From contig NW_025767048.1 in the NCBI RefSeq assembly GCF_003918875.1, positions 868,001 through 932,000 of the forward strand: a DNA stretch of 64,000 nt. The letters run 5' to 3'. Under the pieces are notes generated by a model that saw only the letters and a program-made list of their open reading frames with translations, made no database searches and had not been told where the DNA came from. Source of the stretch: Haliotis rubra (lineage: Eukaryota). Shown here piece by piece: positions 16,336-64,000 of the stretch (within the stretch, counting starts at the first letter, position 1; each line of letters opens with the position of its first letter). Both the position numbers and the translations under genes were made by a program.

Positions 16336-16504
16336 TATGATGTGCTGGCATTAAGAAAACAAAAAGCCATTACTTATATCTGACGTGGTCGCAAAAACAA
16401 AACAACAAGTCATGACTCACATCTGACGTGCGGACATAAGTTAATAAAGAAGTCATGAGTCACATCTGACGTGCTGGCATAAGCAATAAAGAAGTCATGA
16501 CTCT

Positions 16505-22777: not shown

Positions 22778-22811
22778 GTTAGATAATGTTTGTGTATTGC
22801 TTTGTTTCCAG

Positions 22812-31369: not shown

Positions 31370-34300
31370 CTACTCAGTTGTCACATCCGACTGTGGGGGA
31401 ATCTTCACAGGAGACATGCTTGAGTCCGGCGGTGACTGGGCCGTTTGAAGGGGATACCACTGAAGCCATTTGAATTCGACATCATTTACATAATTTCATT
31501 ATGTACATAGGTTTCAGAAGGTTAGGTTATATATTCATCACCAAAAAGTATCAACGGGGTAATGTTATATAATCTGACCCACTATCTGTAGTTACATTCA
31601 TACTTTCCCTACCATGGTGGGCGAGCTGTCCCAGGGGTGTCGGCCCGGGAAAGCGAAATTTCAATATTCCATATTCCCGGTAAAGCGAAAACAAAGTTGT
31701 GCTAGAAGTGCCGCGAATTGCTATGAAAACATCGGATAACCGTACATCAGATTAGCGCGCGACCCCAATACTCGATCTGTTAGCCGCTTAACTGAGATGA
31801 AGTTTCAGTTGTTTCAAGTTTCAGCACGTACGTGGCCCTACTTAACTCTAGTTTTATTAATTCATGTAATGAATTATGATCCTGGCCGAATTTGTCAAAG
31901 TTACGTCAACTTTTTTCAAGGAACATACCTACCCTTATCTATCTACAGCAAGCTTGAGGTGCCGGGATCGAGTCCACCTGTTACCGGGTGTGAAAACCTT
32001 GGAGTCAACTTTGTGTGCAGACTCTCTCAGTGTTGTCACAAGCCCTAGTGTACAGTTCACAACCCCGTTCACTTAATAGAACCCACGAATCTGTTGGTAT
32101 ATGACCAGATGGTGGCCACATGAATACGTGCAAACACATCATTGCTGGTACAACAACGTGCAGTAAACTTGGACAAAGTACTGTGACTATGTGTCCCAGT
32201 CCACCCAGATGTGAATGGGTACCACGTTGGGATGGGAAAGCCACAATAACTCGGTGCACCTAATGGCTGCAAGAGTTGTATAATACCCAGGCGGTTGAGA
32301 CTGATAATACGATGTGCCGTTGAGATTGACATCCAATGATCGAAGGAAAAAAACAAGCGCCTTGAGCATGCACTAGTGGCGTGGATATGTGCGTTATATA
32401 AATATCCTATAATAATAATCATGAAATTGGCTGAACGAATACGCCGCAAAGAATGCCTACATAATTCTATTCCATGTGCGTAATGTTCACAACCCGAAGG
32501 ATAAATTATTGAACAAAAATTATACAAATCGACACAAACAATCCAATGAAGTTAATAGTCGCGATATAGTTGGCGTTTGGCATATTTGCGGTTTCTCAAT
32601 ACACTGAAATAATGGAATTGCTGCTTATTAAGTATTAATCGGTCTCACAGTCACTCAACCACATCATTTTCTCTTGAACCCGGGCTTTTCTGCAATGCTT
32701 AAACCCAAAATGAAGCAAGTCTGGTTTCAGAATCATCTCAATATTGACTGGGGCGCCTTTTCCATATAAAATGTTTTTTTTGTTTCTACCAAAGTAATAT
32801 AAACTAGCCACATTAAGAAACTGTGCATTGTCAAAATATTATCCCAGTTGATAGGTACGATAACAATGTCAAAGGTACATATAAACTTTAATGGAGGAAT
32901 CATGGGACCATAACAAGTCGGGAGAATTTCAATTGAAAAGTCAATCACAATGACGTCACGAGTCCACAAGCGGGACAGGGGTCAAACGACCATGTCACAA
33001 GCTAAATAACGGGTATGTCCACCATCGGCATTGAGAACAGCAGTGCATCGACGACGCATAGAGCCTATCAAACGTGCAAGAAAGGCTTGTGGGATGTCAC
33101 GCCAGATTCTCTCAAGTTCTGTTGCAAGGTCAAGGACGTTATCTGGCGGATGAGGAAGACGGCGTAGACGTCGATCCATCTCGTCCCAAACATGCTCTAT
33201 CAGGGAGAGATCCGGTGAATGTGCAGGCCAAGGCAGTAAGTCAACGTTGTGGTGTTGCAAGAAATCCATAGCAACCCTTGCCGTATGAGGGCGGGCATTG
33301 TCCTGTTGGAATGTTAACCCAGGGCCATGACGTTGCAGAAAAGGAATTGCCACAGGTCGAAGAATCTGATCCCTGTAGCCCACACCAGTTAAGTTGCCCT
33401 GAACAATCACCAAAGGAGTTCTTTGGCGTGCTGTTATTCCACCCCAAATCATCACGGAACCACCACCAAAGCGATTCCTCTCCAAGACACAGGCCTGTGC
33501 ATAACGTTCTCCCACGCGTCTACAGGCACGTTGACGTCCATCACTATGGGAAATGTTAAACCTGGACTCATCTGTTAAAACAACATTTCTCCACCAAAAC
33601 AAGGGTCTGCGGACATGATTTCTGGGCACCACATTCGGCGAGCTTGTCGATGACGTTGTGTCAGGATAGGCCGTATGGCGGGACGTCGTGGTCTGATCCC
33701 ATGATGACGTAAACGTTGTCGAACTGTGTTGGGGTGGATACGGCGAAGTCCTGGGATGGTTCGAGCAGTCATCACTGCAGTCTGAAACCTGTGGCGAAGA
33801 TGGGTCACCCTTATCCATCTGTCCTGTCTTGGCGCTGTTACACGTGGACGTCCAGAACGTGGCCGATGGATGACGTCATTTGTGTTCTGGTAGGGTCTCA
33901 CCAGTGCAGAAATGGTGTTCCGGTGGCAGTGGAAATGTGCAGCCACTTGTCGTTGAGACATCCCCCCACGGACCATCCCGATGGCCTCATGACGTTGTGC
34001 AGACGTGAGCCTTGGCATGCTATGCGTTTCAATAGCCGTTTAATTTTTTGAACGATCGCAAGGGCAGGGGTTGAGCTTTCCAAAGTGACAATATTGTGTG
34101 GCATTCATTTGCTCTGTTTATCTTTCCCGGAATGCACGTGCAACAACGTATTGCACGTCTCAAGGACGAACCCACTGACGTCACGGAACGTGGACATGTT
34201 GGATACATGTCACTAATCTCTGAGTTTAAATCCTTATGTGTCTACACAGGTTTGATAAATTTAGATTTTAAATTTTTGCATGCACAGTTTCTTTATGTGC

Positions 34301-37300
34301 CTAGTATATATACTGTATTTCAAAGACTAAGCGTTAGTCTACGTGAGAATCTACCTCCTCACCCCCTACCTCACTCACCAACTACCCCAACCCAGCCCCA
34401 CACTGGGGTGTCTACTTACAGGAGCACCTATGTTGCATGTGTCGTCAAGTATGTTCCCGGGAGTGTATGGTGGAGGACTAGGAGAACAGTCTGCCTTGTA
34501 TTTCTTGGGCCAAAGAGCGCTGCCGCTTCTCTTCACCTTGGTGCTGTCCGAATAAGATCATATGATCACATGAGATGTGGTTCAAGCTATTTCAATCCCT
34601 TATACAATACAAGCATACTCACGTGTAGTCCGCTTGTATAGTACTAGCATCTAATGCCAACATGTCATACTAGTATCTGATGCCCATATGTTATACTCTG
34701 TTGCAACCAAACGTAACATCAACATCCAGATTTTCCTACCCAAGCGAAAACGTTTAGACCTTTCGGTGATATCGTTCTCAGAGCTTCAAATGGCTGTGGG
34801 CGTGGATTCATGCCACAGATGTCTTTCTTACCTTATCAGCCTGCTAAAGGATGATAACAGCTTTGGTCATGACGGCAAGACATTTAGCCTGATGCTAATG
34901 AAGTTCTTAATTACCCGACTTGTTTGTCAACATAGTACACACATATCGAAGATTTGCTAGTAATTGATTACCCTTTAACTTTGAAAGGCACCACAATCAC
35001 CACGATGATCAACACCAGAGCAGACAGTGTAGGAAGCACTATAACCAGTGCAGTGTTTGGGGAATCTGTAAACCAAGTAAAGTATATTCCGGTATTTCTT
35101 ACTACATGCTGGTTACACTTAAATTATATCAACTGACAGATAGACCACTGAATGAGATTTTATTCTCTCGGACTTTCATCAGTACTTGGAGAAAGATGAG
35201 CTATTTCTCGGGCTTACCATCTGCAGCAGAATCAGGAGGAGAATGGCCACCATCTTAAAGAAATAAACGTACAGTGAACTAAATTGGGTATATGTTTCTT
35301 TTTAGTAGCGTTAACATTAATATTATCTGAGAGGAAAGTCGTCAACCCTCTTGCTGCCTAAATTCATGTACTGCATATTCCATCAGTATGGCAGATTTTT
35401 ACAACTGTCTGCTCCATAACTCCCTTAAGTGGCTTTTAGAAGCTAGTATGATGAAGTGGAACTGACTGACTGACTGAGTTTAGTTTTACGCCGCTTTTAG
35501 CAATATTCCAGCAATATCACGGCGGGGGACACCAGAAATGGGCTTAACACATTGTGCCCATGTGTGGAATCGAACCCTGGTCTTCGGCGTGACGAGCCAA
35601 CGCTTTAACCACTAGGCTACCCCACCGCCCCGATGAAGTGGAACACTTTTTGTGGATAGACAACTTCTTTGTTTCAGTAGTAGCAACTACTACTGCAACA
35701 AAGAAGTTGTCTATCCATAAAAAGTGTTCCACTTTGTCTGCTCCATGTCTGTCGAATCCATGAATCCTTTGTAATTTCCTTTGAAATCTTGTCTTGTAAT
35801 GTTCATCAACCATCTGATATAATGAAAAGCCTGTCTCACAGAACTTACGTTTCTTGCCTGGAGTTAGTAAGTGAGAGTTGAACAGTCTTTAAGTTATATG
35901 ATATTGACGTAGGTCATAGATGTCACGAACACAGATACAAGTACATACACAGAACGCAAATACATGTAAGTACACAGAATACAGCTACATACTCACTGTC
36001 TGACCAAATACGGGATTCCAACCGAAGGATCCTACAAAGGAGCCTTGAACATACGGGACGGTGGGGTAGCCTACTGGTTAAAGCGTTCGCTCGTCACGCC
36101 GAAGACCCGGGTTCGATTCCCCACGTGGGTACAATGTGTTAAGCCAATTTCTGGTGTCCCCCGCCGTGATATTGCTGGAGTATTGCTAAAAGCGGCGTAA
36201 AACTAAACTCACTCACTAACTCGACCAATACCCCTTTCATAAACATATGTTTTTTACACATACCTGTACTGCAATCACTTGCAGATGTTGCTCCTAAACC
36301 TGGAGTTGTCGTTCCTGACGGACATAGGGTACATGCGACGCTGGCAGGACGGTCTTGGTAGGAACCTTTCCCGCACAGGACACACACGCTGTTGTCCTCT
36401 CTCGTCCCAGCAGGACATTCACCTATACAGTACAATATGTATACAACTACTCATTACTAGAATACTGCAGCATAAATCAGAGCATTCTACTTGATTTGCC
36501 CTCAGGTCGTAAGTATATGTTAGCTCAAGTAACAACATAATATAGAGAAATAACTGTTGTTGCTATTGTGCTAATTAACTTCTGAAGAGTGTCAGACTAC
36601 TTTTTGTTATGTACTCTGTCTATGCGTTGTAATAATTTTCCCCTGTGCCAATGGACAATATGTCAGTGATGACTGATTCTGACTGAGAATTATATGAGTA
36701 TACATGCAAAGGCCGTGTGGTAGATTTCGACTAAAAGACACCGGAAGTGTACATCGACGCCTACTCTTCAATCAAGTCTCGTCCTACCACAAAGCCCAGC
36801 AGCTTCTGTAGGCACAGTTCCAGGTGGGCAGTTGATGTGCACATCCGTGGTTCCACTGTTGGGATCCACCGTGTACGTCCTGCCTCCCAGGGTCACTGTG
36901 AATATCGTATTGCTGTTGTTGACCAGCTGCTGGGCGGATATCTCGAACGTGGACACATCAGTGAAGTATGTCTTCAGCTGCCCGGAACCTATAGCGTTAA
37001 AGAGTGAGTGAGTTTAGTTTTACGCCACACTCAGCAATGTTCCAGCTACATGGCGGCGGTCTGTAAATAATCGAGTGCACCAGACAATCCACTGATGAGT
37101 TGAAGAGACTTGGACAAGATGGACACATCAACATGTCAGGAGGGGAAAGGTTAATGCAGGTTTTGGATGGAACCACAATAGATCGGGCTAATATGGGGTT
37201 TGATCGACAATGATATGATACTGGCATGCCTGGGAGTCGATTGTCCATACCGATGCCATTACATAGACACTGGCATCTGGATTATATCAAGAAATATTAC

Positions 37301-40300
37301 ACAGCACGTGACGTTATTTCAGGGATTCTTCGTGTGGATTATATTAACTTGCTGATCTTAAACAGTTTGCATACTACTTACCTTTCTGCTGATTGTTTGC
37401 ACAAAGGATTCTATGATTCATTCTTTTTCTTTCGGACATATGAAGAGTTAGATGAAATAAGATGCAAATATTTGATAAAGGGAAAACATCCTTGAAGGCC
37501 ACTAATTTCCTATTATACATATTACATTTGCAACTGAAAGTGACAAAAGTCGGATTATTTACTTACGCGATTTATCTCTGAATACGAGCGATATGTTCAT
37601 GGGATTAAGACTGTCGGTGTTTGACGTCATCACAATGGCCACAGGGGCACCAGTGGAACGCTTTCTTCTGGTGGTGCCGGGACAGAATTCCACCCGAATC
37701 TGGCATGAGTTGTCCTTCGTGCAATTCAGAGTGTTTGTCTTGGCAAGGAGCTGTGTTGTCAGAGAGGACTTGGTTTGTTCACTGCTGTCACAGGCTAGAG
37801 ATGGGTACTCCATCTGGTGTTGGATGGTGAAGCCACGGGCACTTGATACAGCTAAACCGAACATAACAGTGAGTGAGTGAGTTTTGTTTTATGCGACTTT
37901 TAGCAATGTTCCAGCACTATCACGGCGGGGGACACCAGAGATGGGCTTCACACATTGTACTCATATGGGGAATCGAACCCGGGTCCCAACAAGCGAACGA
38001 TTTGACCACTAAGCTACCCCACCGTCCCCCGAACATTACAAGATGTCACGTAGGTATGTGATTCACGTTATTTAGATCCCTGATATTTAACACTACATTA
38101 TATTTGATATTTAACACAACATGCACATAGATTGAGGTATCTTTCGTAATTTCAACTATAATATTCCAGTATTACGTTTGCTTCGACAAATAATCGGATA
38201 CAGTAAAAATATATTATATTTTTTTCCAGTTTTAGAATCATGTAAGTCGTGTGATTAAGCATAAAAATGAAACAAATACTTTTAAAAGTAATTTTTAAAG
38301 TAATAGGTTAAAGTAAATGTTAAGGATGACTACTAATAGAATATTAAGGTAAATGTCGATGACTTGTTTACTATCTTTATGAATCCACGTGAATTTATAT
38401 GAACTTTAGTCTCCAACGACGGCTCCTCGACAACAATTTCGTTGAAGACTTGACAACCGACACAGACACCTTCACCGACACAGATAACTATCGATTAAGT
38501 CCTTATGAGCTACACACCAGAGCAGGCTGGCAGCCTTGCATGGGGGTTGTCCTCTGTTTGGTGGGTCCACATATAGTTGGTCTCCCTTCCACACTCGTAC
38601 AGCGGCAGCACCGGCTTGATGAACATCAGATCATCCCGACACGAGATGGAACACTGGATCAGGTCGGCAGTCGTGTTGCAGTGAGTCTGGACACCGTATG
38701 ACCTCGGCAGGTGACTACAAGCTGAAACGGCATTGCAACCTGTACCAGGGTATCAGTGATAAGGATCTTGTTTGCTATTTGCAATTTGATGTTTGAATTG
38801 TGTTAATGGCGCAGACCTAGAGCAAGAATGTGTAGAATATTATCCGTGGTCAGTGTAAGAAGCCCGGCCATTTTAGTCTCGTTATGTCGGTCAAAGTTTG
38901 AACTATTAAATGGTTATTAAAAAATATAAATATCCTGACCAAGAGTGTTTGGATAAACATGTTTACAATTCTAAACTGCTTCAGATGATATTTTAAGAAC
39001 ACTTTTATAAACAGTATGCAGTATTGAATTCTGAACTATGTTGAATGGGTTGTAGGATGGTTCCTTGAATGGGCGAGAGTTCAGAGAAGCAAGTTTAAAC
39101 TCTGTATGGAAGTATTTTGAAAATACCTGTGGCCGATTGAACGTTTATAGTCACTTTTTACCTGGACACTCATGTGCATTACAATTTTCGGACAAGGTGT
39201 CACTTCCTGCACACGGTCTTCCATCTGGGTCAGGTGAGGGACTGTTACACTTCCGGTTCCGGGTCATCACTCCTCCCCCACAGGTCACGCTACATTCACC
39301 CCAGTCGGACCATAAACTCCACCCACCGTTAACTTAAAACAGAAACAGACTGCAGGTTTATACATTATATAACTCATAAACTGGTTTCAGTGAAAATTGA
39401 CTTCACGTCACACATATTATATCACATATTAACACCTATTTACTAAGCAACTATTAATTTGGTGGATTGTTATATTTGAAATTACATGAAAACGTAGAAC
39501 GTGTCCAAGAAAGGTTCTAAGAAAGATTGCATTGCAAAAAGTACTGAAGAGTAATAATTATCCGGAAAGAACATATGAATAGGCTATTAAAATGTTGTGA
39601 AAAACATTTATGAAAATAATAATAGTAACTCTTTTCAGTTTTTGTGGTGAGAACATATCTCCCCACCTATAACCTCTTCACATAGTTGTCCCCGGTACCC
39701 CTGTCCGCAGACGCATGTGTATTTGGAGTAGTTGTTGACACACCTGGCCCCGTGTTGACAGCTGTGATGTCGACAGTGGTCAGGAGCTACCTCACACTGT
39801 CGTCCAGAGTACCCATGTGCACAGTCACACCTGTACCTGCCCACCTCGTTCACACAGGTGTGGTTGCCACAAGGACTCGACAGACATTCATTAATAGCTG
39901 CAAAAAGAAAGATTACTCATCACAATCTTCACTTTGATTGATATTAGGATTTTGTGTCATACTCTTGTGTATCAGACTGATGTATTTCCCAGGCGAACGA
40001 GCACGGAATAGTTGGAATATTTTTTGCAAGGCGTTTGGAAGGACTCAAAATCAAAATCATTTTAAACTGCCATTGCAACTGTGTGTTTTTTCAATCAGTT
40101 GGGAGTTGAGGGTATCAAAAATGGGACATCATATGCAATAATTTGCAATTGTTCTCTTACAATCACAAGTGCTGGGTACAATTAATCCCTCGGCGTTGGC
40201 CTCCATGGAAGAGTCGCGTACATGAACGCCACACCCGGAACTGACCTCCCCCACCTCACCTCCGGTCAAAATCCGTCCAACAATGTTGAGGCTACTGATG

Positions 40301-46300: not shown

Positions 46301-49300
46301 TCTAAACACATCAGATAGTAACTTAATTTGTTGCACTAATGTACACACATTGGTGGGAGTTTGATGAAGTACAGTAAACGATACATACGCTTAAAAGGAA
46401 ATCTAAGAAACCACTAATTTCAGTTAGTTATAGCCGTAGTTCTTTATATGCATGTTGATTAAACCATACAACACGTGGTCAGTTCATTATATGCGTAGTA
46501 TTATAATACTTTGTAATATTGTTCATTTAATGAGGGCTAACGAATATTTATCGAGTTATACATTCCTTGAGCTGAGTACCAATGCAGTTTCATGGAAACG
46601 ATACGATGTTACTAATATAATATAAGCGTCTGAATCGACCTAACCTGTGGGTATTGTGCATACCTATGCATTTTCCAGGTAGTGAGAACTCTCCCTTCTT
46701 GTTGCAAATGACCATTGATGGTCCTTCAATTGAGAAACCCCTTTTGCAAGATAGTGTACACAAAGTCTTGAATGTTGGCGGATTCCCCATGCAATAGACA
46801 TTTCCGTTCGTCACATTTGGTATTGTCGGACACTCCTTTTCTGTAAAATACTAGTACATTTTACTTACATATACGTATCCTGCTTTGTACAATTTGCCTC
46901 TAACCTTTCATATCCATAAACCTCAAAGTGAAAACAGCTGAAAATAGCCACCAATTTGGGGTACAATTCCTTCGATCTTTCTCTTACTTCAGTTGAACAC
47001 GAAAGACATAGCCATAATATGGCCCAATCAGCTTGAACCAGCACAAAGAACTAGAGAACCTAACTTAATAAAGCTTTCCGGTCGTGTTTAATTCTACCTC
47101 GTCATAGGTATGAAATCACTATGGAGTCACGTGAGAAGAGACCGCGTGCTTAATCTTTTTCATTCTTTTTCGAGGTGAGCAGACGCTGTTCACCTTTCTT
47201 CATATAAAGCGGTAGATGAACTCAGAACCTGGTTCATCTAGTTCGTTATTTTCTTAGTTTGTTGAAACTATCGCGTGCTTAATCTTCATTTTTTAAAGCT
47301 GTGAATGGACACATATCCACCACAACATACTCAATCCAAAATGGGAGGGTACATAATACCGGGTGGGCAGATGACTCCTCCGTTCCTGAACTATAACTCG
47401 GTAGAACTACAATCAAAGTTCACCTTACAGGTAAGTCTCGTTTGATTTATCAATTAATCGTGCATGTGAGAAACTGCCGAATCGTTATGTTAGATAGCTT
47501 TCACATGTTTGGGGTTTACAGCTAACCTGTACACTCGAAAGTAGCACTCCATTTCTCCTTGTCACAGACTGACTCAGTCACATTATCTGCCTCGTATCCC
47601 TCATCGCAGTACAGCTTACAGGTTGACCCAGAGATCTCTCTCTTGTCGCACTCCACTCGCCCTGTGCTCGGCCAGTGGATCGGGGAGCATCGTTGCACTG
47701 GATTTATAATATATTACAATCACTTTATTAAAGATGGTTTTTTTGTGTGAGCCATGACACGTCAAGGAGAAAGAACTGGGAATTATTAAAAATCAAAATC
47801 TGTATAGCGGAAGAAGACCAAATCCTTGTCCTAAAAATTATTTATTTCGTTTAGAAATGATTTGTGTACACATTCTACGTTTAATCATGCAAACAGTTAG
47901 AATTACTTTAACCAAGACATAATATCTACAGTAAATTAGACCTTAGTTTGAGCAAACCTTTTACTGTGAATTGTATGCTACAAGATGCAGAAAGCCCTCC
48001 TTTGTCCACGGTCTTGTATTGTATGAAATGGGTACCTTCGTCAAACACACTTCCAGGATCTTTTCCCATTATCTGTTGCACTCTTTGAGTTATGAAATGT
48101 TAAGAGGGTTTAAGTTATATATTACAGATTCAAATACAAATTTAGCAGATGAGGTACGGGCGGTCCTGTTATAGTCAAGCTGCACAGGCTCACCCTGATA
48201 CTTTAACAGCCAGACTGGCCATTCCCATAATCAGCTTCAATCCCTTACCCCTCTATCCAGAGAGTGAATGACATGAACGCCCTATCTATTTGGTCCAACA
48301 AAGAACGTTTCGGGGAATATAAAGACTCCACAGCACTGCAGCCTTCTGCATTAAACCGTGTCAAAAGGGATGTGACAGCATATTCACAACCGTCTGCAGG
48401 AAATAATTTCTAAACTTGAGACATCCAAACAGTAGCAATGTGATATAGATGAGGCCTTTAACTATTTTGATATGTTTTTAAAAGAAATGCACGACTATGA
48501 CGGCACTATGGAATGCTATGTGCAAGGCAGAGTGCTGTTGGTGTCGGAGTCGTGGTCGGACACGTCTGGAGTTGAAGGCTGAGTGTGTGCACACCCGGAC
48601 AGTGTTTGACAAAGCCGTTTAGCAAGCCAAGCGGATGTATAGGGAAAAGACCCTGCAAGACGTTGAAGAAATATGTCAATCAAGATCAAGTGAGTTTTGG
48701 AAGAAGATCGGCAAGGCTGGTGTTGGAAGTGCAAGAAGAAAACAGATTCCTATGGAGGTGGTTACTGAAGATGGATCGATATCCAGAAATAAGCCTGTTG
48801 TTTAGACACATGGACTGCAGCATACTCCACCCTTCTTAACAATAAAGTCGATGGAGAGGAAGGCAGTCGTTACAAACGTCAGCCCCCGCCTTAATAACGC
48901 AATAACACTTCAGGAGATACGCCATGTTCTACTCCAAGCCCAAAAAGGTAAAGCACGATGGCATACAAGTGGAAATGCTAAAGAATGAAGAAGCTCTCAC
49001 GTTTCTACACAATTCCTTTAATCTGTGGTTTAGAAATAGGAAAGTTCCAACTGGATGATCGAAAGGAATTCTCAACCCCATACTAAAGTCATATACAGAT
49101 GATCCTCGCGACCCTTTGTCATACAGAGGAATAACACTAGCACGTTCGCCTTACAAGCAATACTGTGGAATTTTAAACAATGGGCTTTCTGGGCATGTTG
49201 AAAACCGTGATATACTAGATGATGAGCAGAACGGCTTCAGAAGAGGAAGATCAACCATAAAACATGTATCAGCTATAGAGACCAGGAAAAGTATTGGCCA

Positions 49301-52300
49301 ACAGACATTCGCAGCTTTCGTGGACTTTAGGAAAACTTACGACTGTATAGATAGAAGTATTCTATGGAAAACGTTGCAGAATATTGGAATTGAAGGGAAA
49401 ATGTCTAATGCCACCGTTTCGCTTTACCATAATGTAAAGTCATACGTGCGGATAAGCGGGTCAAGTACGCCCTGGTTTCGGGTCAACAGTGATCTACGTC
49501 AAAGATGTCTGCTTTTTCACTCCTACTATTCAACCTGTACATCAACAACCTGATATCAACCCTAACGCCTCTGACATCGGCATACCTGTTGACGACAAGA
49601 GCATAAGCGTCCTAGCCTACGCCGATGATATCATTCTACTGGCCTTGATCGAAGTTGACGTGAATACACTTCTAGAGGGACTCAGTCAGTGGTGCCAGGT
49701 AAACAAGATGTCTGTCAACCCAGAGAACACAAAGGTCATACATTTTAGAAGCCAAGCAGTAGAAAGAACAGATGTGATATTTCAGTGTTGAGACAAGATC
49801 TTAGAGATAGTATAAAGCTACAATTACCTCGGCCTGCTCTTGACAGAGCATATGAACTACACCCGGATGGGAAATGCAGTGGTAGGTGCAGCAAGCAGGG
49901 CATTAGGACTCCTCATATCAAAGTGTAAAATCCTAGGAGGCATGCAGCACAAGACTTTCACCATGCTTTACGACTCCATGGTATGGGCTACTATCGACTA
50001 CGGTGCTGCAATATGGGGAACTTATCATATCCCAGCCATAAACGTTGTTCACAACCGAACTATGACGTACTAATGGGCGTGAGGAAGTTTACGCCGAAGA
50101 GTGCTGTATCAGGTGATATGGGATGGGTGCCACCGGTTGTCCGGCGATGGAAGAGTGTTGCTCGATTTTACAAGCGATCATGCGATCAGAACCCGAACAG
50201 ATTATCTTCTAATGTGTTCAAATGGGCCCATTCTAAGTCTGTGCCTAGTAAGCGGAACTGGCATCAACGTGTACACAGGAAATTTAGAAGTTTAGATCTT
50301 GAACATTTTATCCCAATTGGAAATACGTTTAACATACGCTTTTTAATATCAGAGTTTGAACAGAAAGTGATGCAAAACTTTTTACAGGAGTGGAGTGTTG
50401 CAGTCAATCAGGAGAACAGTAACCGGTCAGGACGGGAAGAAAAGTTGCGACTGTATGGTAACAGTCCTATGGAGTTGAGCCGCATCTACAGAGTGACCTC
50501 CCTTGGTCGTATCGCCGAGCACTGGCAATGATCCGCTTTGGAGTCGCCCCGCTACGTGTTGAGACAGAACGATACACCAACATGACCCTGAACCAACGTG
50601 TGTGTTTTAATTGTAATGAGTGCGTTGAGGGTGAATGTCATGTTTTGTTCCAATGCCTACTTTATTTTGAGGTTACAAACAGTCTTTTAGTCAAATATGA
50701 AGAAATATGTTATAATTTTAAATGTTTGAGTATCATGTCCGAGGTTGAGATGTTTTATTTAGCAGCCAAAACCTGAAATATTTTATTGGAAAAACGGCAA
50801 GGTATTTTATGTCATTGTGGGTAGTCCTTTTTCTAAGAGTTTTTATATATAAAGTTGGATTTGGAAGCATATTTTAATACTGCAGATGTGAATTGTGAAC
50901 ATTGTCCCTCAAGGAATCAAAAGGATTTTTGACTCAATATCCTTATCTACACCAATGTCATCTATTGTATAAACTTTGCACTTTATTATGCACTTTGAAT
51001 ACGACTATCGTTTATCACGTCTTCTGCCTACCCTTTGCTGCCATCTTCTGGATCTGTAGCAGTAGGTGGAGACCAAGTCACATGTGCTGTCGTCGCACCT
51101 GTCTCTGCTGTCACATCACTCACTCGTGGACACGTGATCGTTGGAGGTGTGTTTGGCGGGGAGCTCTCTGTCGTGAAACATCGTAACTGATAATATGGAC
51201 ATGTTTGTTGTTTTCTTTAAGTTGGGGGCTTGTGATTTCGTTAAAAACCCTGTATGTCAGAATACTGACATAGAGAAAGACCGCATGTGGACAGTGGTAC
51301 ATTCTGTTCATATAATGTTAACTAAATGACACAAAACATGCAATTCTTTTACAGAGATCTAGAAACAGTGTATATACGTTTACAAATCGGCACAATATCT
51401 AAATATTGAGATTAAAACGAACAAAACCTTCAGAATATAATTATCAGGATCTTACTTTCGCAAACAAACATGCAGACGGCTTGTGCTATTCCTGTAATTA
51501 GTCCAGTTACTGCCCCCATTATTGGCGCTACATACTGGATTTGACGTTTGTGTCTGGTTATAGCATTGTGTTTCAGGTCGTCGTGTGCTGAAATAATGTA
51601 TCACACGGTCATTATTACCATGCAAACTCAACAATATGGCAACCAGGCATATTATTTGTGTGTGATAATACATGTATAATTACTCTTTTTGTCTCAACAT
51701 TCTATTTAGTCAGTTTGTATTTCTTATTAACGTTCAGTTACGAAAATGAATCACCGTGTGTCCACGTGGTATCTTCGTTACATAGCATGACTCGCATGGT
51801 TCCTGGAAATCTACATTTGGTTCCTGGAAGAACACTCTTGGTAACGGAGTCGGTTTTAGGAAACACATCCTTGTCACAAGACCCATCAAACGACTCTGGC
51901 AAACTGCATCCAATATATGTAGCCTGTGTAATCAAAAGAAAACAAAAACGTCAAATTTAGCTTACCAAATTCTTTAGTGAAATCCTGGGACCATTTTCGC
52001 ATAAAGGCGGGACCGGTTAGACTATAAATAGATGAACGTTTGTATTTAAAAGTTTCATTAAGGTTAATCTACATTCATCGACTATCATAACTGCTCTGTT
52101 TAGGTGCTTAAGAGATTATGAATCGTAATCTGAATAACAGGTTCAGAATATACAGCATATAAAACAATATTTTTATATACGTGCCAATTTCAGTTTAATG
52201 TTACACATCTGTGTTATTATGTAATGATTTCAAATATTCCCTTCGTGAGGTCAAATGGTAAGATGGAATGTATCATACCTGAGTGATATTTGTATGAATC

Positions 52301-52347
52301 AAGATGATCGCTATAGAGGCAGACAGGGAGGGCGATGTACCTATCAT
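31370..52347 (-). CDS. Gene D: SVEP1/uninflatable-like multidomain type-I membrane protein, about 1,520 aa, 27 exons, one apparent 1-bp frameshift
   Basis: Exons 52347-52279 (signal-like), 51923-51755 (CCP-like), 51587-51456 (RHKR peptide), 51167-51032 + 48082-47958 (HYR), 47697-47527, 46840-46664 (CCP), 46301-46053 (HYR), 45601-45378 (CCP, frameshift), 44534-44346 (CCP), 44008-43535 (SEA-like, RRKR), 42628-42467, 42054-41893 (GCC2/3), 41514-41322, 40821-40631, 40304-40161 (pentraxin/LamG), 39897-39667 (EGF x2), 39332-39162 (TSP1), 38721-38518 (CCP), 37851-37567, 36988-36788 (SEA-like, RRKR), 36422-36264 (GCC), 35253-35218, 35065-34972 (TM), 34840-34832 (9 bp), 34543-34420 (PPPY), 31459-31370 (terminal, tentative). 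Splice phases are all compatible once 1 nt is restored at 45428-45432. Confidence 0.85.
31940..32420 (+). mobile_element. Probable SINE with conserved core and (ATA)n tail
   Basis: B-box-like gggatcgagtcc, core cagtccacccagatgtgaatgggtacc, 3' aagcgccttgagcatg...ataataataat. Confidence 0.5.
32802..34306 (-). mobile_element. Tc1-family (DD34E) transposon, near-intact transposase split by one frameshift
   Basis: ORFs 34018-33575 (HTH, GRPR) and 33818-32982 (TDESRF, QQDNARPH, SPDLSLIEHVW); imperfect TIRs with TA flanks; in the last intron of D. Confidence 0.93.
35463..35631 (-). mobile_element. Full-length SINE family 1 with 13-bp TSD
   Basis: GATGAAGTGGAAC at 35450-35462 and 35632-35644. Confidence 0.92.
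35636..35734. repeat. Near-perfect 99-bp palindrome (48-bp arms, 3-nt loop, 2 mismatches)
   Basis: AAGTGGAACAC...CAGTAGTAG-CAA-CTACTACTG...GTGTTCCACTT. Confidence 0.92.
48800..50790 (+). mobile_element. Degenerate non-LTR retrotransposon (RT ORF2), antisense in a D intron
   Basis: SYRGITL, EQNGFRRGRST, FVDFRKTYD, LAYADD, and C-terminal LRVETERY..RVCFNC..ECHVLFQC; multiple stops and frameshifts. Confidence 0.9.
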
Positions 52348-53765
52348 GACAGCCCTGCAAACAGCAAGATCATGTAAGCAGAAAAAATCAGATAGTGAGT
52401 GAGTGAGTATGTGATTGAGTGATCGAGTGAGTGAGCGAGTGAGTAGGATTTTACTATAACGTCGGTTTACACTATAACAGTAACATATATTTATTATCGT
52501 ACATATAATACATCAAAATATCAATCGACATACGTACGAACCCTAAAATCATTCAAAAACACATAAACTTCTAAAACTTAGCTACCAATTACATTGCCTC
52601 GTGCCCTGCCCGCATATATATGTAAATGAACATGAAATTCATCCAAATTAGATCACATATTTTATGAAATATCATTGCTTTGAAAATATTAGCAGCAACA
52701 TGTACTAACCGTGTTCTTCGGTGACCATATGTGGTACGTGCGAGAACAGCGCAAATGTATACCTGTAAGATTTGACTGCTTGCCAGCTTTTAACAGGTAA
52801 CCTCCCACTGATTTGCATAACCGGTTTAGGAAACACCTGTGATAAGGTACAAGCAAAATCTGGCAGTCACTGAAGTTTTAACATGAAAGATTTTAGTCAC
52901 GGGCGTAATTAAACACATTCCTCCCACCGTGTGTATTTTAAGCAATGAAATAATGTAACGCCAATAAGGGTTAAGGCTCAACCACTTATGTTCCTACGTT
53001 CAAAGACAGTTATAAGTGTGAAACCTTGTTATACCGAATCCTGTTCATTCGAAACGGCCACCATTCGGAAGATTAGAGCTTGCAACACACACATGAATAT
53101 GTTAATTTAATTTGGGTTTGACTGTAAATGTACAGTTTATATATATTCATAACTAAAGTAACACAAATTCAATGGTTATTCCACAAATGCAAATTCTGCC
53201 TTCGCATGGCTGTGTAGAATTACACCTCTTCTATAATTCAAACAATAGCACGAAATCATTGTTTGATTCCAACGATATCAAAGAATGTATTCATGAACTA
53301 CTATCAAATAGTGGCACCCCTGCAGGGACAACCAAATCAAGTGTTCACGGGAACATATTACTATATATTGAACAAGTGAGTGAGTGTGAAACGGTGTAAA
53401 ACGTGAAAAGCTGTATTAAGGCCTTATATCAGTATTAAGGCCTTATAGCTGTATTGGGACCTTAAGACTGTAACCCTCATCAAACATCTCATGACAACGT
53501 ATGACGGTCTTTGGCCGCAAAAAGATTTGAGATCCGAGTGACATACAGATGTTTCATTGTGACTTTTGTAAAGGTGAAGTCAGTCTTTTGGTCTTACGTA
53601 CTTATGGGTCCTTGATCGTAACATACACATAGAGGGACAATGGACCAGCCTGTAATATCCCAGTGTAGCTTTGAAAGCTTGCCAACTCTTATCAGCTTGG
53701 TGTTTTGATTTTACGAGTTAGCACTACCAGTCTGCACAAACCAAGAGTTCATTGCAGGTGTAACC

Positions 53766-56700
53766 ATGCTGTGGTTGATCTTGATCGCCGTCATTCCTAT
53801 CACTACATGCCAGAGAGCCGACACATGGGACAGTTGTGGATGCTACTGGGAGACATGGCAGGCCTGGTCGAAGTGCTCCAGTAGATGTTATGGCAGACAG
53901 ATACGTGAGAGGAGGGGTGTTTGTTGACACCAGACCAGAATGTGGGACATTTGAATCCTGCGACAGAGGAAATGGGGGTTGGGACAGAAGAGACTGCAAC
54001 AAACACTGTGATGCAGGTCGCTACAATGGGCAAGGATGCTCCTGTCCTCTGGGAAGATATGGAGAATGCTGTGACAGCAGTAAGTATCACCTCATCTAAA
54101 CATGTAACACATACCCTCAAGAACAATGGCGCCTATACCAGGTAGCGAGCTTATGTTTTGTTTTGTTTTGCTTGTTGTTTAATTCCGCAATATTCCAGTT
54201 TTATGACGACAGTCTGTAACTAATCGAGTCAGACAATCCATAGGAATGCATCAAGTCAGCGATCCTGTTTACGTATGTTTCTAGTTGCTGCTCTTCTCAA
54301 AGCCTATCTATCTATCTGTCAAAAGTACAAAGGTACGAAAACTGCAATATAACAGAATTACATTCGTGCTGCGTAATGTTTGACTCGTTTTCTCTTTAGT
54401 AACGACCTGCGCCAGACCAGTGTCTATTCCATACGGAAACGTTCACGGGGGGAAGGTTCCAGTATAATGACGTCATCACCTACACGTGTGACACCAACTA
54501 TAACCTGACCGGTTCCTACGAGAGGACCTGCATGGTTAACGGAGGCTGGAGTCGTTCTACACCAAGATGTCTCTGTATGTATAGCATTAAGCTGTGTTAT
54601 ATTTAGAGAATAACCCAAGAGGTACCAGTGATGACAGGAAATATGTCCCTCGTGAAATTAATAAATGAATAAAAAATCATCTTGCAGTATCGTTCGATAT
54701 CATTTCCGGCTACACTTTTAGTGTACACCTTGCAAGTTCTATTTCACCATGTTTAGTCTCTTTCACATGTACACGCGAAAGGAATTTAGTGGATGTATTA
54801 TTCTCGTTCCACGTCCAGCAATGAATACGTCCACCTTGACCAGGTCATTGACGTTGATTGCAGTTAACTGGGTAGCCTTGTTTGTTTACAAAATACGGTT
54901 AGACATTTTTTTACTATAAAACACGTTGTTAAGTAAACGACGTCATATTGTTAATGACGTATGAAATGAAGCATTAAATAAGCATCAAAATCGAAAACCT
55001 GTATGTTTCTTGTTGATATTTTAAAATCTCGAATCACTGTGATTACATTATTATTATTATTATTAAATTAGTTCCGGCATCCAATAAAAATGTACAAATA
55101 TACGATCGACCAAACAACGTCGAGAATCAATAAATTGCACATTGTGCAACTATCAAAAAGATATTACACGGGGTCTCCTCGCCCGTTTGGGTAATAAATG
55201 AAAATAATCATGATTGCTGCATTTAATTATAGCTGTGATGAAGGTTTGTTGTTTAACGCCACATTCAGCAATATTCAAGCTATATGACGGCGGTGTGTAA
55301 ATAATCTGGACCAGACAACCCAGTGATCAATAGCATGAGCATCATTATACACAATTGGGATACAATGACATGTTTCAACCACCCGATCTCGTTAGTCGCC
55401 TTTTACGACAAACATGGCCCGGGTTGCTGAAGACCAGTTCTAATCTAATCTTAACGAGTCGAAGCTTTTACATGTAGGTATGGATGACATGCACTCAACA
55501 AAACTACGATTCCTGAAACCCGGATACATACAAGATCTTGGTTTAGCTGGGACTTGTTGGAATCCGGAATCTCTGCCGTTGAAGTGCATTGACTTGCATT
55601 GTGTTGTTATCCTTCATGATATTGTAATGTTCCTGTAGTCGAGACATTTTATCAGCATTTTCTGAAGTGTATGCATTTCTTCATATCTGATATAATGCAC
55701 CTCTCACATATGCCCTGTTCTGTTTCCAGTCGCCGAGTCGTGTAGGAGCGGCCCGTGTCAGAATGGCGGCACATGTGTGGATGGTCTGGCCAGGTACGAC
55801 TGTGTCTGTGGAAGCGGCTGGACTGGGAAAAACTGTGATGTGGGTAAGTAGGTTTAAGAAACAGACTGCTATTCCACAAAAACTGCATAAGCATTAGCAT
55901 TGAAACCATACTCGTTAACACAGGTAAACTGCCTTTAGCATAATTGCTAATGTTCGTTTCAGATGTGCAAGCTCCAGTGGTTGACCAGTGTCCTTCTAGT
56001 GTCCGTTTGACTACTTCATCTCGTGAGATGACCTACACATGGACAGTTCCTGTCTTCTCTGATCCCCATGGCAACCCCGTGAAAACGTCCTCTGATTATG
56101 ATAGCAACAATTTTACTTTCCCCTGGGGAGACTTCACCGTCCTCTACACTGCAGTGAAACCCAGCAACGGCCTTGAGACGAACTGCAGCTTTACAATCAG
56201 TGTCAGACGTAAGGCCGCTTGTTGAATTGGTCATAGATGTATCACGCCGAAGACCTGGGTTCGATTCCCAACATGGGTAAAATATGTGAAGCCCATTTCT
56301 GGTGTCCCCCGCCGTGATATTACTGGACTATTGCTTAAAGCGGCGTAAAACTAATTCACTGATCTTGCAACAGAAAGTAACAATAGTCTGATATTAAGTG
56401 ATCTGTCCTGACAGCCAACAGTGATAATTGTATCAATGTAATTATTATTTCAATGTCTTCGATCTTTCTTATCTTTTCTTTTCATGGGATACATATACAA
56501 CGTATGTATTTATGTTCCGGGTACAGCCAAACCGTGTCCACCCATCGTTGCCCCGAGCGACGGTTACGTCCTGTGTAACGGATGGAGAGCAGACTATGGG
56601 CAGTACTGTCTCGTTGGATGCAACGCGAACTACTCTCTCCCACGCAGTTTTGACGCGAGACAGTGGCTAGTGTGTGGCGCAAGTGGACACTGGGCTCCAG

Positions 56701-57242
56701 ATTTGTTTCCACTACGATGCAAAGGTGAGTGACACGAATTGTATATTCTCGTCAGTCACATTTTATTAAACACACAAGAATATTTTAAATTACCACAGTG
56801 ACTTACCATATAGTTTACAATGTTATATGTCCAGGATTAGAATCACAATACGCCTTATATGTAGTATGATTTTACGCCGTTTTAACCATATTCCATCAGA
56901 ATCATGGCGGGGGTCACCAGAAATGGGCTTCACACATTGCACCCATATGGGGATTCGAACCCGGGTCTTCGAGCGAACACTTTAATCGCTGGGCTGCTGC
57001 CACGTTAATGATATTAGCAGATTGTGTTCTATTCATACATGCATTATGATTGCTTCTTATTTTTCACAGTCGGAGATGCAGGTGGCCATGTGGTGTTGAC
57101 GCCTGGAGACTGTCTCAGCGGGACTCACAAGCAAAAGGAAGACTTCATCCATGCTCTCAAACGGTCGCCTTTCAACTCTGTGTGCATTGACAACCCTACT
57201 ATCTGCTCCCCTGACAATGTCAATGTTGTATGCGGGGCATAG
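53766..57242 (+). CDS. Gene C: secreted signal-TSP1-EGF-like / CCP / EGF / HYR / CCP / half SEA-like protein (about 405 aa if two +1 G frameshifts are errors, otherwise a pseudogene)
   Basis: Exons 53766-54079, 54400-54574, 55730-55843, 55963-56208, 56527-56724, 57070-57242. Exons 1 and 2 are each 1 nt longer than in A, from an extra G at 53914-53917 and 54447-54452. Confidence 0.75.
54600..55197. mobile_element. About 600-bp insertion unique to a C intron, probable non-autonomous transposon
   Basis: Absent from homologous A and B introns; weak inverted ends (atttag..aataaccc / gggtaataaat). Confidence 0.5.
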
Positions 57243-63735: not shown

Positions 63736-64000
63736 GTAACATGTGCCCACTAAATTATAATACATTGTGGATTAGATTCATCACTCCAAATAGAGTTCCC
63801 TTGGAGTAATCTCCAGTAATGTGAACAGGACTGATTCATCCGTAACCTTAAACACAACGACATATATTTTCTTATTGTCTTTCAATTTGTAATACCGACA
63901 GGTCGATTTATGATGATCTTTAGCTGACATATTATCGTGAAGAGTTTGTGAATGTAAGTCGTGTATAGAAGAAGCAGTACTATCATGAGCCACAGGTAAT

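What the first reader, a model, noticed from the sequence alone, without database searches (positions are those of the whole stretch)
31370..57242. Head-to-head membrane/secreted gene pairs in a duplicated three-gene unit
Seen: D(-)/C(+)/E(+) is mirrored by A(-)/B(+)/F(+). D and C start codons are about 1.4 kb apart (52347, 53766); A and B are likewise divergent. Blocks 12.0-22.8 kb and 53.4-62.3 kb are homologous. Inference: a co-regulated receptor plus soluble partner system evolving by birth-and-death, as expected for immune or self/non-self recognition loci. D differs from canonical SVEP1 in lacking a visible vWA domain and having a TM and tail.
Basis: partly seen in the sequence, partly recalled or inferred. 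Interest (0 to 1): 0.72.

Follow-up and report, generated by a model that had tools for sequence, protein, structure and literature searches.

The report
Conserved mollusc receptor/secreted gene pair, decayed duplicate
In the blacklip abalone, a large membrane protein gene and a small secreted relative sit head-to-head as they also do in four bivalves, so the pairing is ancient; the second "unit" in the window is a young, mostly broken tandem copy, not a working mirror image.

Summary
The window is Haliotis rubra contig C2158:868001-932000.

**What holds up**
- D(-) and C(+) are head-to-head, with ATGs at 52347 and 53766.
- Blocks 12.0-22.8 kb and 53.4-62.3 kb are paralogous at 74-84% identity, far too diverged to be haplotypes.

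**What does not**
- A/B/F is not an intact mirror of D/C/E. It is the decayed left copy of a ~49-kb tandem duplication.
- B lost its acceptor, ATG and signal peptide, and carries a TAG.
- F is E with an 8.46-kb internal deletion, a phase clash and no 3' exons.
- A keeps only D-like TM and tail exons, fused to an inverted copy of B's first three exons. The A/B divergence is therefore a palindrome, not a copied promoter.

**C is intact**
- Its two apparent frameshifts are assembly errors.
- H. asinina and H. cracherodii have 405-408-aa orthologs.

**New evidence**
- The D-like(-)/C-like(+) pair, with ATGs 2.2-3.5 kb apart, recurs in Coelomactra, Crassostrea, Solemya and Pecten.
- The D/C/E order recurs at two more H. 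rubra loci.
- C-type proteins end at the point where D has its RRKR site.

**Not established**
- Co-expression could not be tested, because no RNA run holds the stretch.
- No tool result here bears on an immune role.

An earlier scan note described A. The cross-species pair was not noted before.

The parts
31370..52347 (-). Gene D, a type I membrane mosaic protein. Exons from 5' to 3': signal exon 52279-52347; sushi-like 51741-51950; 51455-51679; HYR 51031-51216; Sushi 47525-47713 and 46593-46850; HYR 45994-46335; Sushi 45336-45620; sushi-like 44299-44565 (no Pfam hit); cleavage module 43527-44003 (RRKR at 43794-43805); Ephrin_rec_like 42453-42644 and 41864-42139; LamG_3 40572-40934; EGF x2 39638-39916; TSP1 39154-39333; sushi-like 38513-38752; second module 37562-37888 (RRKR at 37658-37669); Ephrin_rec_like 36232-36450; TM 34971-35075; tail 34408-34548 (PPPY at 34465-34476); last exon 31373-31477.
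   Evidence: Pfam hits come, with no VWA and no Pentaxin.
52348..53765 (.). The D-C divergent intergenic region, 1.4 kb between ATGs. C's ATG exon follows a CAG acceptor, so C probably has an upstream 5'UTR exon. A simple repeat lies at about 52385-52581.
   Evidence: (depth spike). About 330 bp upstream of C's ATG exon is conserved in A, B and C.
53766..57242 (+). Gene C, a secreted protein of about 405 aa. Exon 1 (signal plus TSP1-like) runs from 53766 to about 54088. Sushi is at about 54425-54570, EGF at 55696-55845, HYR at 55944-56222, Sushi at 56511-56729, and the C-terminal half-module at 57048-57239. The assembly carries one extra base at 53914 and one at 54447.
   Evidence: Pfam. Reads drop one base at each of the two places (table 4; records 12 and 13 match exactly apart from that gap). 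Orthologs P0137 and P0138 of 405 and 408 aa end with the same residues.
62250..64000 (+). The 5' part of gene E. Signal exon 62250-62327, sushi-like 62913-63161, then 63519-63806. The gene continues beyond the window: Sushi x4 at 66.0-68.5 kb, module at 68.8-70.3 kb, exons shared with F at 70797-80063, Ephrin_rec_like at 81551-81742, TM at about 82.56 kb.
1..9956 (-). Gene A, a chimera annotated as a 317-aa product. ATG at 9956; exons 1-3 (signal/TSP1-like, Sushi, EGF) are copied in reverse from B. A short stalk exon follows, then a D-like TM exon at 6577-6681 and a D-like tail exon at 246-383 (PPAY). The last exon lies just left of the window. The intron holds a 26-bp satellite at 472-6275.
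   Evidence: P0001 is 100% identical over exon 1. The new EGF-to-TM junction is phase 1 to phase 1. Homology to D is 77-83%. TRF.
7847..13844 (.). Palindrome with left arm 7847-10379 and right arm 12019-13844. The spacer holds a Tc1-like remnant (10618-11355) and a stretch (11427-11976) that is inverted relative to C's upstream region 52924-53357.
12441..15513 (+). Pseudogene B, the copy of C. About 80 bp holding the acceptor, ATG and signal peptide are missing at 12417/12440. There is a TAG at 13161-13163 where A and C have GAG, and the last Sushi cysteine is Ser at 13209-13211. The other exons are open.
   Evidence: Against C: dS 0.155, dN/dS 0.37.
22700..28084 (+). Remnant F, the copy of E. 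It keeps the signal exon 22700-22777, then only 34 nt (22778-22811) before the Ephrin_rec_like exon at 22812. The 8.46 kb matching E's 62337-70796 are deleted. Phase 0 meets phase 1. Nine further exons are open. Homology to E ends at 28084, before E's last Ephrin_rec_like, TM and tail exons.
12019..28084 (.). Left copy of the tandem duplication. With A's 3' part it spans window -691 to 28084. The right (parent) copy spans 31196 to about 80063.

Best explanation
**Shown: the unit and its genes**
- The window holds one ancient three-gene unit plus its recent, decaying tandem copy.
- D(-) and E(+) are large type I membrane proteins. They are built of HYR, Sushi, Ephrin_rec_like, LamG, EGF and TSP1 exons, with two dibasic-site modules.
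- C(+), lying between them, is a secreted protein of about 405 aa: signal, TSP1-like, Sushi, EGF, HYR, Sushi, then a C-terminal half-module.

**Shown: the duplication and its decay**
- A stretch of about 49 kb, from just 3' of D to inside E, was duplicated in tandem in the H. rubra lineage.
- In the left copy, D' lost every ectodomain exon, C' became pseudogene B, and E' became the deleted, out-of-phase, 3'-truncated F.
- B's first three exons were later copied in reverse next to the D' TM and tail exons, giving the intact chimera A.

**Shown: conservation**
- The D-like(-)/C-like(+) head-to-head pair also exists in four bivalves.
- The D/C/E order also exists at two other H. rubra loci, in a clam and (C then E) in H. 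asinina.

**Inferred**
- The pair predates the gastropod-bivalve split.
- It is held together by a shared divergent regulatory region, so that D and C are made in the same cells.
- C carries only the first half of D's cleavage module and stops where D is cut. It therefore most likely acts with or against the cleaved receptor, as a soluble partner or competitor of D's N-terminal fragment.
For: **Duplication structure:**

**Lesions in B:**

**Deletion junction and phase clash in F:**

**A:**
- Annotated 317-aa product.
- In-phase new junction.

**Order of events, from dS:**
- B-C 0.155 and A-C 0.185, against A-B 0.107.
- F-E 0.088.
- B-C protein identity is 88.9%, against about 86% for C versus the H. 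asinina ortholog. The duplication therefore follows that split.

**C is intact:**
- Reads remove one base at 53914 and at 54447.
- Orthologs P0137 and P0138 exist.

**Not haplotypes:**
- Identity is 74-89%, against a reported heterozygosity of 1.3-1.4% (PMC6774278).

**Paralogous units in the same genome:**
- C2476: D at 540-556 kb (-), C at 565-574 kb (+), E at 590-609 kb (+). C507 is its mirror image.
- C657: 126.5 kb (-), 161.9 and 207.6 kb (+), 247.0 kb (+).

**Other species:**
- A D-like gene lies on the opposite strand, with 3.5, 3.15, 2.2 and 2.5 kb between coding starts, in Coelomactra antiquata, Crassostrea virginica, Solemya velum and Pecten maximus. Species were assigned and from names.
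- The oyster D-like gene has the same exon order as D.
- An E-like gene lies downstream on the same strand in the clam and in H. asinina.

**C ends at D's cleavage loop:**
- tblastn.
- Ten C-type proteins end 0-7 residues after the aligned Cys.
- hhalign gives 94.7% probability, E 5.8e-8, for C-termini against residues 15-66 of the D module.
- RRKR/RRRKR is kept at the same place in a 31%-identical D paralog.
Against: - No RNA evidence: no RNA run holds the stretch. TSSs, co-expression and even transcription of D, C and A in H. rubra are untested.
- In five gastropod look-ups, no D-like gene lay within 10 kb of a C-like gene: H. asinina, H. cracherodii, H. rufescens, Gigantopelta (an LRR gene instead) and Patella. 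These may be solitary paralogs, or the partner may lie beyond the 10-kb flank.
- In H. rubra's other units, the distance from D's first HYR exon (51031-51216 in the window) to C's ATG is 9-20 kb, against 2.5 kb here.
- In the oyster the downstream E-like gene is on the opposite strand.
- Block duplication by itself keeps order and orientation, so the within-genome repeats are weak evidence of constraint.
- The module fold is a low-confidence model (pLDDT 57.8) with no significant PDB match.
- The lesions in B and the deletion in F were not checked against reads.
Confidence: 0.67

Rival explanations
1. Linkage is by descent only. The D/C/E order and orientation persist because nothing has broken them, and because local block duplications copy them. 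There is no shared promoter and no functional link between the proteins.
For: - Within H. rubra the repeated units are what block duplication would give.
- Spacing varies 2.5-20 kb between units.
- Solitary C-like genes exist at C2476:472.6 kb and 354.2 kb, in Gigantopelta, H. rufescens and Dreissena.
- E's orientation differs in the oyster.
Against: - The same divergent pair, with only 2.2-3.5 kb between coding starts, is found in four bivalve lineages: protobranch, two pteriomorphs and a heterodont. It is also found in a vetigastropod.
- Such retention of orientation and short spacing over that evolutionary distance is unusual without constraint (my own knowledge of microsynteny decay).
- The truncation of C exactly at D's cleavage loop links the two proteins by structure.
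Confidence: 0.22
2. The left unit (A/B/F) is a second working system. B and F would be expressed from other starts or as fused transcripts, and the lesions seen would be assembly errors like those in C.
For: - The assembly does have 1-bp errors at 53914 and 54447.
- All nine F exons and five of six B exons are open, with dN/dS of 0.36-0.37.
- B is not significantly faster than C against outgroups: 21 versus 12 unique changes, p=0.16.
Against: - B's defects are an ~80-bp deletion and two substitutions, not homopolymer slips.
- F's junction leaves a 34-nt intron and a phase 0 to phase 1 clash. A stop follows after 2 codons if unspliced, or 20 codons if spliced.
- F has no TM or tail exons. Homology ends at 28084.
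- A dN/dS near 0.4 is what one constrained branch plus one young neutral branch would give.
Confidence: 0.07
3. The left block is an uncollapsed haplotype or a misassembly of the right block.
For: - The assembly needed haplotig purging (PMC6774278).
- Elsewhere, C507 and C2476:535-598 kb are 91-97% identical and may be leftover haplotigs.
Against: - Identity between the blocks is only 70-89%.
- There are large structural differences: an 8.46-kb deletion, an inverted duplication, an inversion and a 5.8-kb satellite.
- Both blocks lie on one contig.
- Contigs of the source sample match C's copy exactly and bridge its exons (table 8).
Confidence: 0.01
4. C and E (and likewise B and F) are one gene, with C's exons serving as alternative 5' exons of E.
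For: - They lie on the same strand and are adjacent.
- C's exons are phase 1-1, like E's domain exons.
Against: - C's stop follows the same residues in H. asinina and H. cracherodii orthologs, and C-types in eight other molluscs end within 0-7 residues of the same cysteine.
- C-like and E-like are called as separate genes in the clam and in H. asinina.
- E has its own ATG and signal exon at 62250.
- Intron-free contigs of about 1.4-2 kb carry complete C-type ORFs.
Confidence: 0.03

Closest known systems
SVEP1 / Polydom (the label that automatic annotation gives to many of these mollusc genes)
   Same: Both are extracellular mosaics that use Sushi, HYR, EGF, Ephrin_rec_like and a LamG/pentraxin-class domain.
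   Different: D has no vWA and no Pfam Pentaxin hit. It has at most 7 Sushi or sushi-like exons, only 3 of which reach Pfam's Sushi model. It has TSP1 repeats, two dibasic-site modules, a TM helix and a PPxY tail. The bivalve D-likes show no VWA either. It is therefore not an SVEP1 ortholog.
Conserved bidirectional (head-to-head) gene pairs sharing a divergent promoter
   Same: The genes are on opposite strands with 5' ends facing. Coding starts are 1.4-3.5 kb apart. The arrangement is kept across distant species.
   Different: TSS spacing and co-expression are unknown here. Classical pairs are defined by TSSs under about 1 kb apart (my own knowledge). In this case the two products are also paralog-like in domain make-up.
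Birth-and-death evolution of tandem receptor gene clusters
   Same: There was a tandem segmental duplication, followed by pseudogenes (B, F) and one chimeric survivor (A).
   Different: No sign of diversifying selection was found: dN/dS is 0.2-0.8 overall. Only one young duplicate is seen in this cluster.
SEA-type juxtamembrane cleavage modules of mucins and other cleaved heterodimeric receptors, and separately encoded soluble decoy receptors
   Same: The model of D's module shows a beta-alpha-beta | beta-alpha-beta order, with the cleavage site in the central hairpin. There is a weak SEA lead. C equals the part of the module before the cut.
   Different: There is no Pfam SEA hit and no significant PDB fold match. 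The site is a furin-type RRKR, not an autocatalytic G|SVVV. Association of the two halves is untested.

Membership tests
SVEP1 / Polydom | N-terminal von Willebrand factor A domain | tested here: not met
   None of 82 minus-strand ORF pieces of 45 aa or more across 31.3-52.4 kb hits a VWA family. None is listed for the bivalve D-likes.
SVEP1 / Polydom | Pentraxin domain | tested here: not met
   There is only a sub-threshold Laminin_G_3 hit (23.4 bits against a cutoff of 27.6) and no PF00354.
SVEP1 / Polydom | Long array of about 30 Sushi/CCP repeats; secreted matrix protein without a TM | tested here: not met
   There are about 7 Sushi or sushi-like exons, only 3 with a Pfam Sushi hit. A TM helix at 34971-35075 and a cytoplasmic tail are present.
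SVEP1 / Polydom | HYR, EGF and Ephrin_rec_like domains present | tested here: met
Bidirectional head-to-head gene pair | Divergent orientation with adjacent 5' ends | tested here: met
   ATGs are at 52347 (-) and 53766 (+).
Bidirectional head-to-head gene pair | Transcription start sites within about 1 kb, and correlated expression | not testable with these tools
   No RNA run holds the stretch. All runs laid were DNA contigs.
Bidirectional head-to-head gene pair | Arrangement conserved between distant species | tested here: met
   It is present in four bivalves, with 2.2-3.5 kb between coding starts. It was not seen within 10 kb in five gastropod look-ups.
Tandem segmental duplication with birth-and-death | Collinear paralogous blocks on one contig, diverged beyond allelic level | tested here: met
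   Identity is 70-89% over -691..28084 against 31196..80063. Reported heterozygosity is 1.3-1.4%.
Tandem segmental duplication with birth-and-death | Disabled or remodelled copies | tested here: met
   B, F and A.
SEA domain | Sequence match to the SEA family | tested here: not met
   There is no Pfam hit for 43497-44051. The atlas feature score is only 0.78.
SEA domain | Alpha/beta sandwich with cleavage in the beta2-beta3 hairpin | tested here: inconclusive
   The order of secondary structure fits, but mean pLDDT is 57.8. Foldseek against the PDB finds only generic ferredoxin-like folds at E>0.02.

The most novel reading that the evidence does not exclude
The secreted C-type protein is a separately encoded 'first half' of the receptor's cleavage module. 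After furin cuts D (or E), C's C-terminal beta-alpha-beta half-domain docks onto the membrane-bound second half and replaces the receptor's own N-terminal fragment. One membrane stub could then carry exchangeable ectodomains. The head-to-head arrangement, kept since before gastropods and bivalves split, would exist to make both components in the same cell.
Probability: 0.12. Interest if true: 0.8.

Novelty: new variant of a known kind. Interest (0 to 1): 0.6.

Why it matters
- Automatic annotation names these genes inconsistently (SVEP1-like, SNED1, P-selectin-like, Notch-like, CSMD3-like) and treats them as unrelated.
- The evidence here shows a defined, mollusc-wide pair: a cleaved mosaic membrane protein and a small secreted relative that stops at the cleavage point. 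They are kept head-to-head in lineages as far apart as abalone, protobranch clam, scallop and oyster.
- That gives a concrete, testable case of a shared divergent promoter and of a receptor-plus-soluble-partner relationship in a phylum with few characterised cell-surface systems.
- The window also gives a dated series of events: tandem duplication, then inverted duplication, then decay. This shows how a new membrane-anchored chimera (A) can arise while its sister copies die.
- Two apparent frameshifts in a real gene turned out to be assembly errors, which is a practical warning for annotation of this genome.
- SVEP1-like genes have been reported as copy-number-variable and as sweep targets in other abalones (PMC9936805, PMC13229213). 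Whether those are the same genes is not known.

Tried and rejected
1. **RNA evidence.** The run search found only DNA holders. Expression and TSS questions stay open.
2. **C as a pseudogene.** I first read C's two frameshifts as real. Reads from the source sample remove one base at each place, so I rejected that reading.
3. **F as an intact paralog of E.** Rejected after flanks were fetched and the junction aligned.
4. **N-terminal exons of D and E.** The signal, sushi-like and peptide exons are too diverged to locate in the C2476 and C507 paralogs. Exact D-C spacing there is therefore unknown.
5. **More flank from C657.** That unit is known only from exon hits.
6. **Fold of the D module.** The AF2 model with a 4-row alignment has low confidence, and Foldseek against the PDB gave nothing significant. 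The atlas lead to SEA is weak.
7. **Relative-rate test of B against C with two outgroups.** Not significant.
8. **Per-exon dN/dS above 1 in two F/E exons.** This rests on 6-12 changes, so I did not take it as selection.
9. **Variants in the read table over C's EGF exon.** These are likely contigs of the A copy, which is 92-94% identical, so I did not use them as polymorphism.
10. **Spliced models.** Joined models were not built or searched. All searches were exon by exon or used database proteins.
Full report
**Identity of the DNA**

The window is G000:C2158:868001-932000. The product of gene A in the window is an NCBI protein of Haliotis rubra on a contig of 1,072,991 bases. The genome's size and contig count match the published Nanopore-based assembly: 1.378 Gb in 2,854 scaffolds, one round of Pilon polishing, heterozygosity 1.27-1.44% (PMC6774278). 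The window has no N runs. I fetched 30 kb on each side and use window coordinates throughout, so values below 1 or above 64000 lie in the flanks.

**Checking the observation**

- A self-comparison confirms that 12.1-22.8 kb and 53.4-62.3 kb are collinear paralogs at 74-84% identity. One internal inversion is present: 20391-21937 against 61759-60705.
- D lies on the minus strand.
  - Its last codon is followed by a stop at 31370-31372.
  - Its ATG is at 52345-52347 and opens a 23-codon hydrophobic exon that ends in CAG|GTATGA.
  - That exon is phase-compatible with the next one.
- C lies on the plus strand, with ATG at 53766 and stop at 57240-57242. The stated coordinates and the 1.4-kb spacing therefore hold.
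- D's exons hit HYR, Sushi, Ephrin_rec_like, Laminin_G_3 (weak), EGF and TSP_1.
- Among 82 minus-strand ORF pieces across D there is no VWA and no Pentaxin hit.
- A TM helix, a PPPY tail exon and a terminal exon are present.

**What the "mirror" unit really is**

- **The duplication extends beyond the window.** With the flanks, F's exons (22787-28084) match 70797-80063 at 81-89% nucleotide and 94% protein identity. They do not match the part of E visible in the window.
- **Extent of the two copies.** The right copy runs from 31196, just 3' of D, to about 80063, inside E. The left copy runs from -691 to 28084. This is a tandem segmental duplication with one breakpoint inside E.
- **E has its own signal exon.** It begins with the ATG at 62250, spans 26 codons and ends in a GTAAGA donor.
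- **F is broken.**
  - F keeps the signal exon (22700-22777).
  - Only 34 nt then separate its donor from the acceptor of the first Ephrin_rec_like exon at 22812.
  - The 8.46 kb that hold E's sushi-like, Sushi and first-module exons (62337-70796) are gone.
  - The signal exon ends in phase 0 and the next exon starts in phase 1. Splicing gives a stop after 20 codons, and read-through gives a stop after 2.
  - F also lacks E's last Ephrin_rec_like exon (81551-81742) and TM exon (about 82.56 kb).
- **B is a pseudogene.**
  - It lacks about 80 bp that hold the acceptor, ATG and signal peptide present in both A and C.
  - It has TAG where A and C have GAG (13161), and Ser in place of the last Sushi cysteine.
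- **A is a chimera.**
  - Its first three exons are the reverse complement of B's (arms 7847-10379 and 12019-13844).
  - Its TM and tail exons are D-like at 77-83%.
  - The novel EGF-to-TM junction is phase 1 to phase 1.
  - The annotated 317-aa product reads signal, TSP1-like, Sushi, EGF, stalk, TM, PPAY tail.
  - This agrees with an earlier scan note on A (s1-339690).
- **Consequence.** The A/B divergence is the centre of a palindrome, not a duplicate of the D/C intergenic arrangement.

**Order and age of events**

Nei-Gojobori counts were summed exon by exon.

| Pair | dS | dN/dS |
|---|---|---|
| B vs C | 0.155 | 0.37 |
| A vs C | 0.185 | 0.40 |
| A vs B | 0.107 | 0.22 |
| F vs E | 0.088 | 0.36 |
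| A vs D (TM, tail) | 0.19 | 0.76 |

- The tandem duplication came first and the inverted B-to-A copy later.
- B's lesions came after that, because A lacks them.
- Introns are 70-82% identical.
- B-C protein identity is 88.9%, slightly above the roughly 86% between C and its H. asinina ortholog. Many sites are shared by B and C against the outgroups. The duplication therefore postdates the split from H. asinina and H. cracherodii.
- B has more unique changes than C (21 against 12), but the difference is not significant.
- The divergence is far above allelic level, so the haplotype explanation is excluded.

**C is intact**

- In the assembly C has two frameshifts relative to A and B, both in G runs.
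- Contigs from the source sample omit one base at 53914 and one at 54447. They otherwise match exactly (table 4 and records 12 and 13).
- Both frameshifts are therefore assembly errors.
- H. asinina and H. cracherodii have 405- and 408-aa orthologs with the same six modules and the same last residues.

**The unit elsewhere in the genome**

- Exon searches of the whole assembly and fetched loci show the same D(-)/C(+)/E(+) order on C2476: 540-556 kb, 565-574 kb and 590-609 kb.
- C507 carries its mirror image. The two are collinear at 91-97% identity, so C507 is a leftover haplotig or a very recent copy.
- On C657 the pieces lie at 126.5 kb (-), 161.9 and 207.6 kb (+), and 247.0 kb (+).
- Protein identity of these units to the window's genes is about 30-65%, so they are old.
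- Two further C-like genes, at C2476:472.6 kb and 354.2 kb, have no D-like or E-like hit nearby.

**The pair in other molluscs**

- A full-library search with A's exon 1 and a word search with a clam C-type protein show a family of 405-434-aa proteins in bivalves and gastropods only. They appear under many unrelated automatic names.
- Genomic look-ups gave these contexts:

| Species | Upstream gene on opposite strand | Distance between coding starts | Downstream |
|---|---|---|---|
| Coelomactra antiquata (GCA_047288015.1) | D-like, 1364 aa | 3.5 kb | E-like, 1561 aa, same strand, 6.2 kb after C |
| Crassostrea virginica | D-like, 1505 aa | 3.15 kb | E-like on the opposite strand |
| Solemya velum | D-like, 1588 aa | 2.2 kb | none called |
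| Pecten maximus | D-like, 1502 aa | 2.5 kb | none called |

- The oyster D-like gene has the exon order HYR, HYR, Sushi, Sushi, HYR, Sushi, Sushi, the same as D.
- H. asinina shows a C-like gene followed 7.2 kb later by an E-like gene on the same strand.
- No D-like gene lay within 10 kb in H. cracherodii, H. rufescens, Gigantopelta (an LRR gene instead), Patella (two tandem C-likes) or Dreissena.
- These look-ups hit paralogs other than the ortholog of the window's C. All 12 look-ups were then spent, so the neighbours of P0137 and P0138 remain unseen.
- I infer that the divergent D/C pair predates the gastropod-bivalve split. The alternative of repeated independent origin is not formally excluded.

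**How C relates to D**

- C's last exon aligns with residues about 33-79 of D's 185-aa exon, and C stops one residue after the 'CG' that in D is followed by KTSRRKR.
- Ten C-type proteins from nine species end 0-7 residues after that cysteine.
- A profile of their C-termini matches residues 15-66 of the D-module alignment with 94.7% probability, E 5.8e-8.
- A D paralog only 31% identical keeps RRRKR at the same place. E has a weaker VKRS there.
- The module has no Pfam hit.
- A low-confidence model (pLDDT 57.8) gives the order strand, helix, strand, loop with RRKR, strand, helix, strand. The atlas gives a weak SEA lead. Foldseek finds only generic ferredoxin-like sandwiches at E above 0.02.
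- The SEA likeness is therefore a lead, not a result.

**Most likely mechanism**

- Shown: the gene structures, the duplication history, the lesions, the conserved arrangement, and the end of C at D's cleavage loop.
- Inferred, at roughly even odds: a shared divergent regulatory region keeps D and C together and co-expressed.
- Inferred, at low odds: C acts on the cleaved receptor as a partner or competitor of D's N-terminal fragment.
- No tool result here bears on an immune or self/non-self role. Papers report an 'SVEP1-like' gene as the top copy-number difference between two abalone species (PMC9936805) and a sweep at an SVEP1 homolog in black abalone (PMC13229213). That label covers many genes, and identity with this locus was not tested.

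**Limits**

- There is no RNA evidence.
- B's and F's lesions were not checked against reads.
- Flanks of other species were limited to 10 kb.
- Spliced models were not joined or searched.

Noticed in passing
window 53914 and 54447: The assembly has one extra base in a G run at each place. This creates false frameshifts in exons 1 and 2 of gene C. Contigs from the source sample lack the extra base.
   Followed up: yes
window 472-6275: A 26-bp satellite of about 224 copies at 89% match sits inside the intron of chimera A, between its D-like tail and TM exons. D has only a trace of it at 34.6 kb.
   Followed up: partly
window 9256-9410, 14280-14422, 14958-15122, 20148-20235, 24887-25042, 30711-30858, 35467-35631, 36055-36221, 37870-38028, 56242-56354, 56863-56995: A SINE-like element of about 150 bp is present in both orientations in many introns. 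Read contigs pile up there to depths of 1e5-1e6, so it is a very high-copy repeat in this genome.
   Followed up: no
window 32985-34039 (-), 10618-11355 (+), 48.5-50.8 kb (+): Transposon remnants lie inside the genes. There is a Tc1/mariner-type DDE_3 ORF in D's 3' intron and a related piece in the A-B palindrome spacer. A reverse-transcriptase (LINE-like) ORF run sits in D's 5' intron.
   Followed up: partly
window 11427-11976 vs 52924-53357; 20391-21937 vs 60705-61759: Two stretches are inverted between the left and right copies. The first lies in the palindrome spacer just upstream of B and could reflect a flip of the spacer by recombination between the arms.
   Followed up: no
G000:C507:46-136 kb vs G000:C2476:535-598 kb (L008-L025): These two contigs are collinear in opposite orientation at 91-97% identity but differ by large insertions. 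They are probably a leftover haplotig pair, or else a very recent segmental duplication.
   Followed up: partly
window 8005-8523: A 259-bp unit is repeated twice at 99% identity inside A's intron between the Sushi and EGF exons. It is a very recent local duplication.
   Followed up: no
window 43527-44003 (-) and 37562-37888 (-); F 27486-27791; flank 79474-79779: D carries two modules that each follow a sushi-like exon and contain RRKR. The E and F copies have QRKKR in the second module. The second module is only about 24% identical between D and E/F, and it has no Pfam hit.
   Followed up: partly
L032 (Patella, GCA_932274485.2) 1112-14787: Two C-type genes of 415 aa each lie in tandem on the same strand. 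The C-type gene has therefore also duplicated on its own in a limpet.
   Followed up: no
window 23207-23846 and flank 71187-71687; flank 90934-92436: A 41-bp tandem repeat lies in the intron after the first Ephrin_rec_like exon in both F and E. A separate satellite with a period of about 54 bp lies 27 kb to the right of the window.
   Followed up: no
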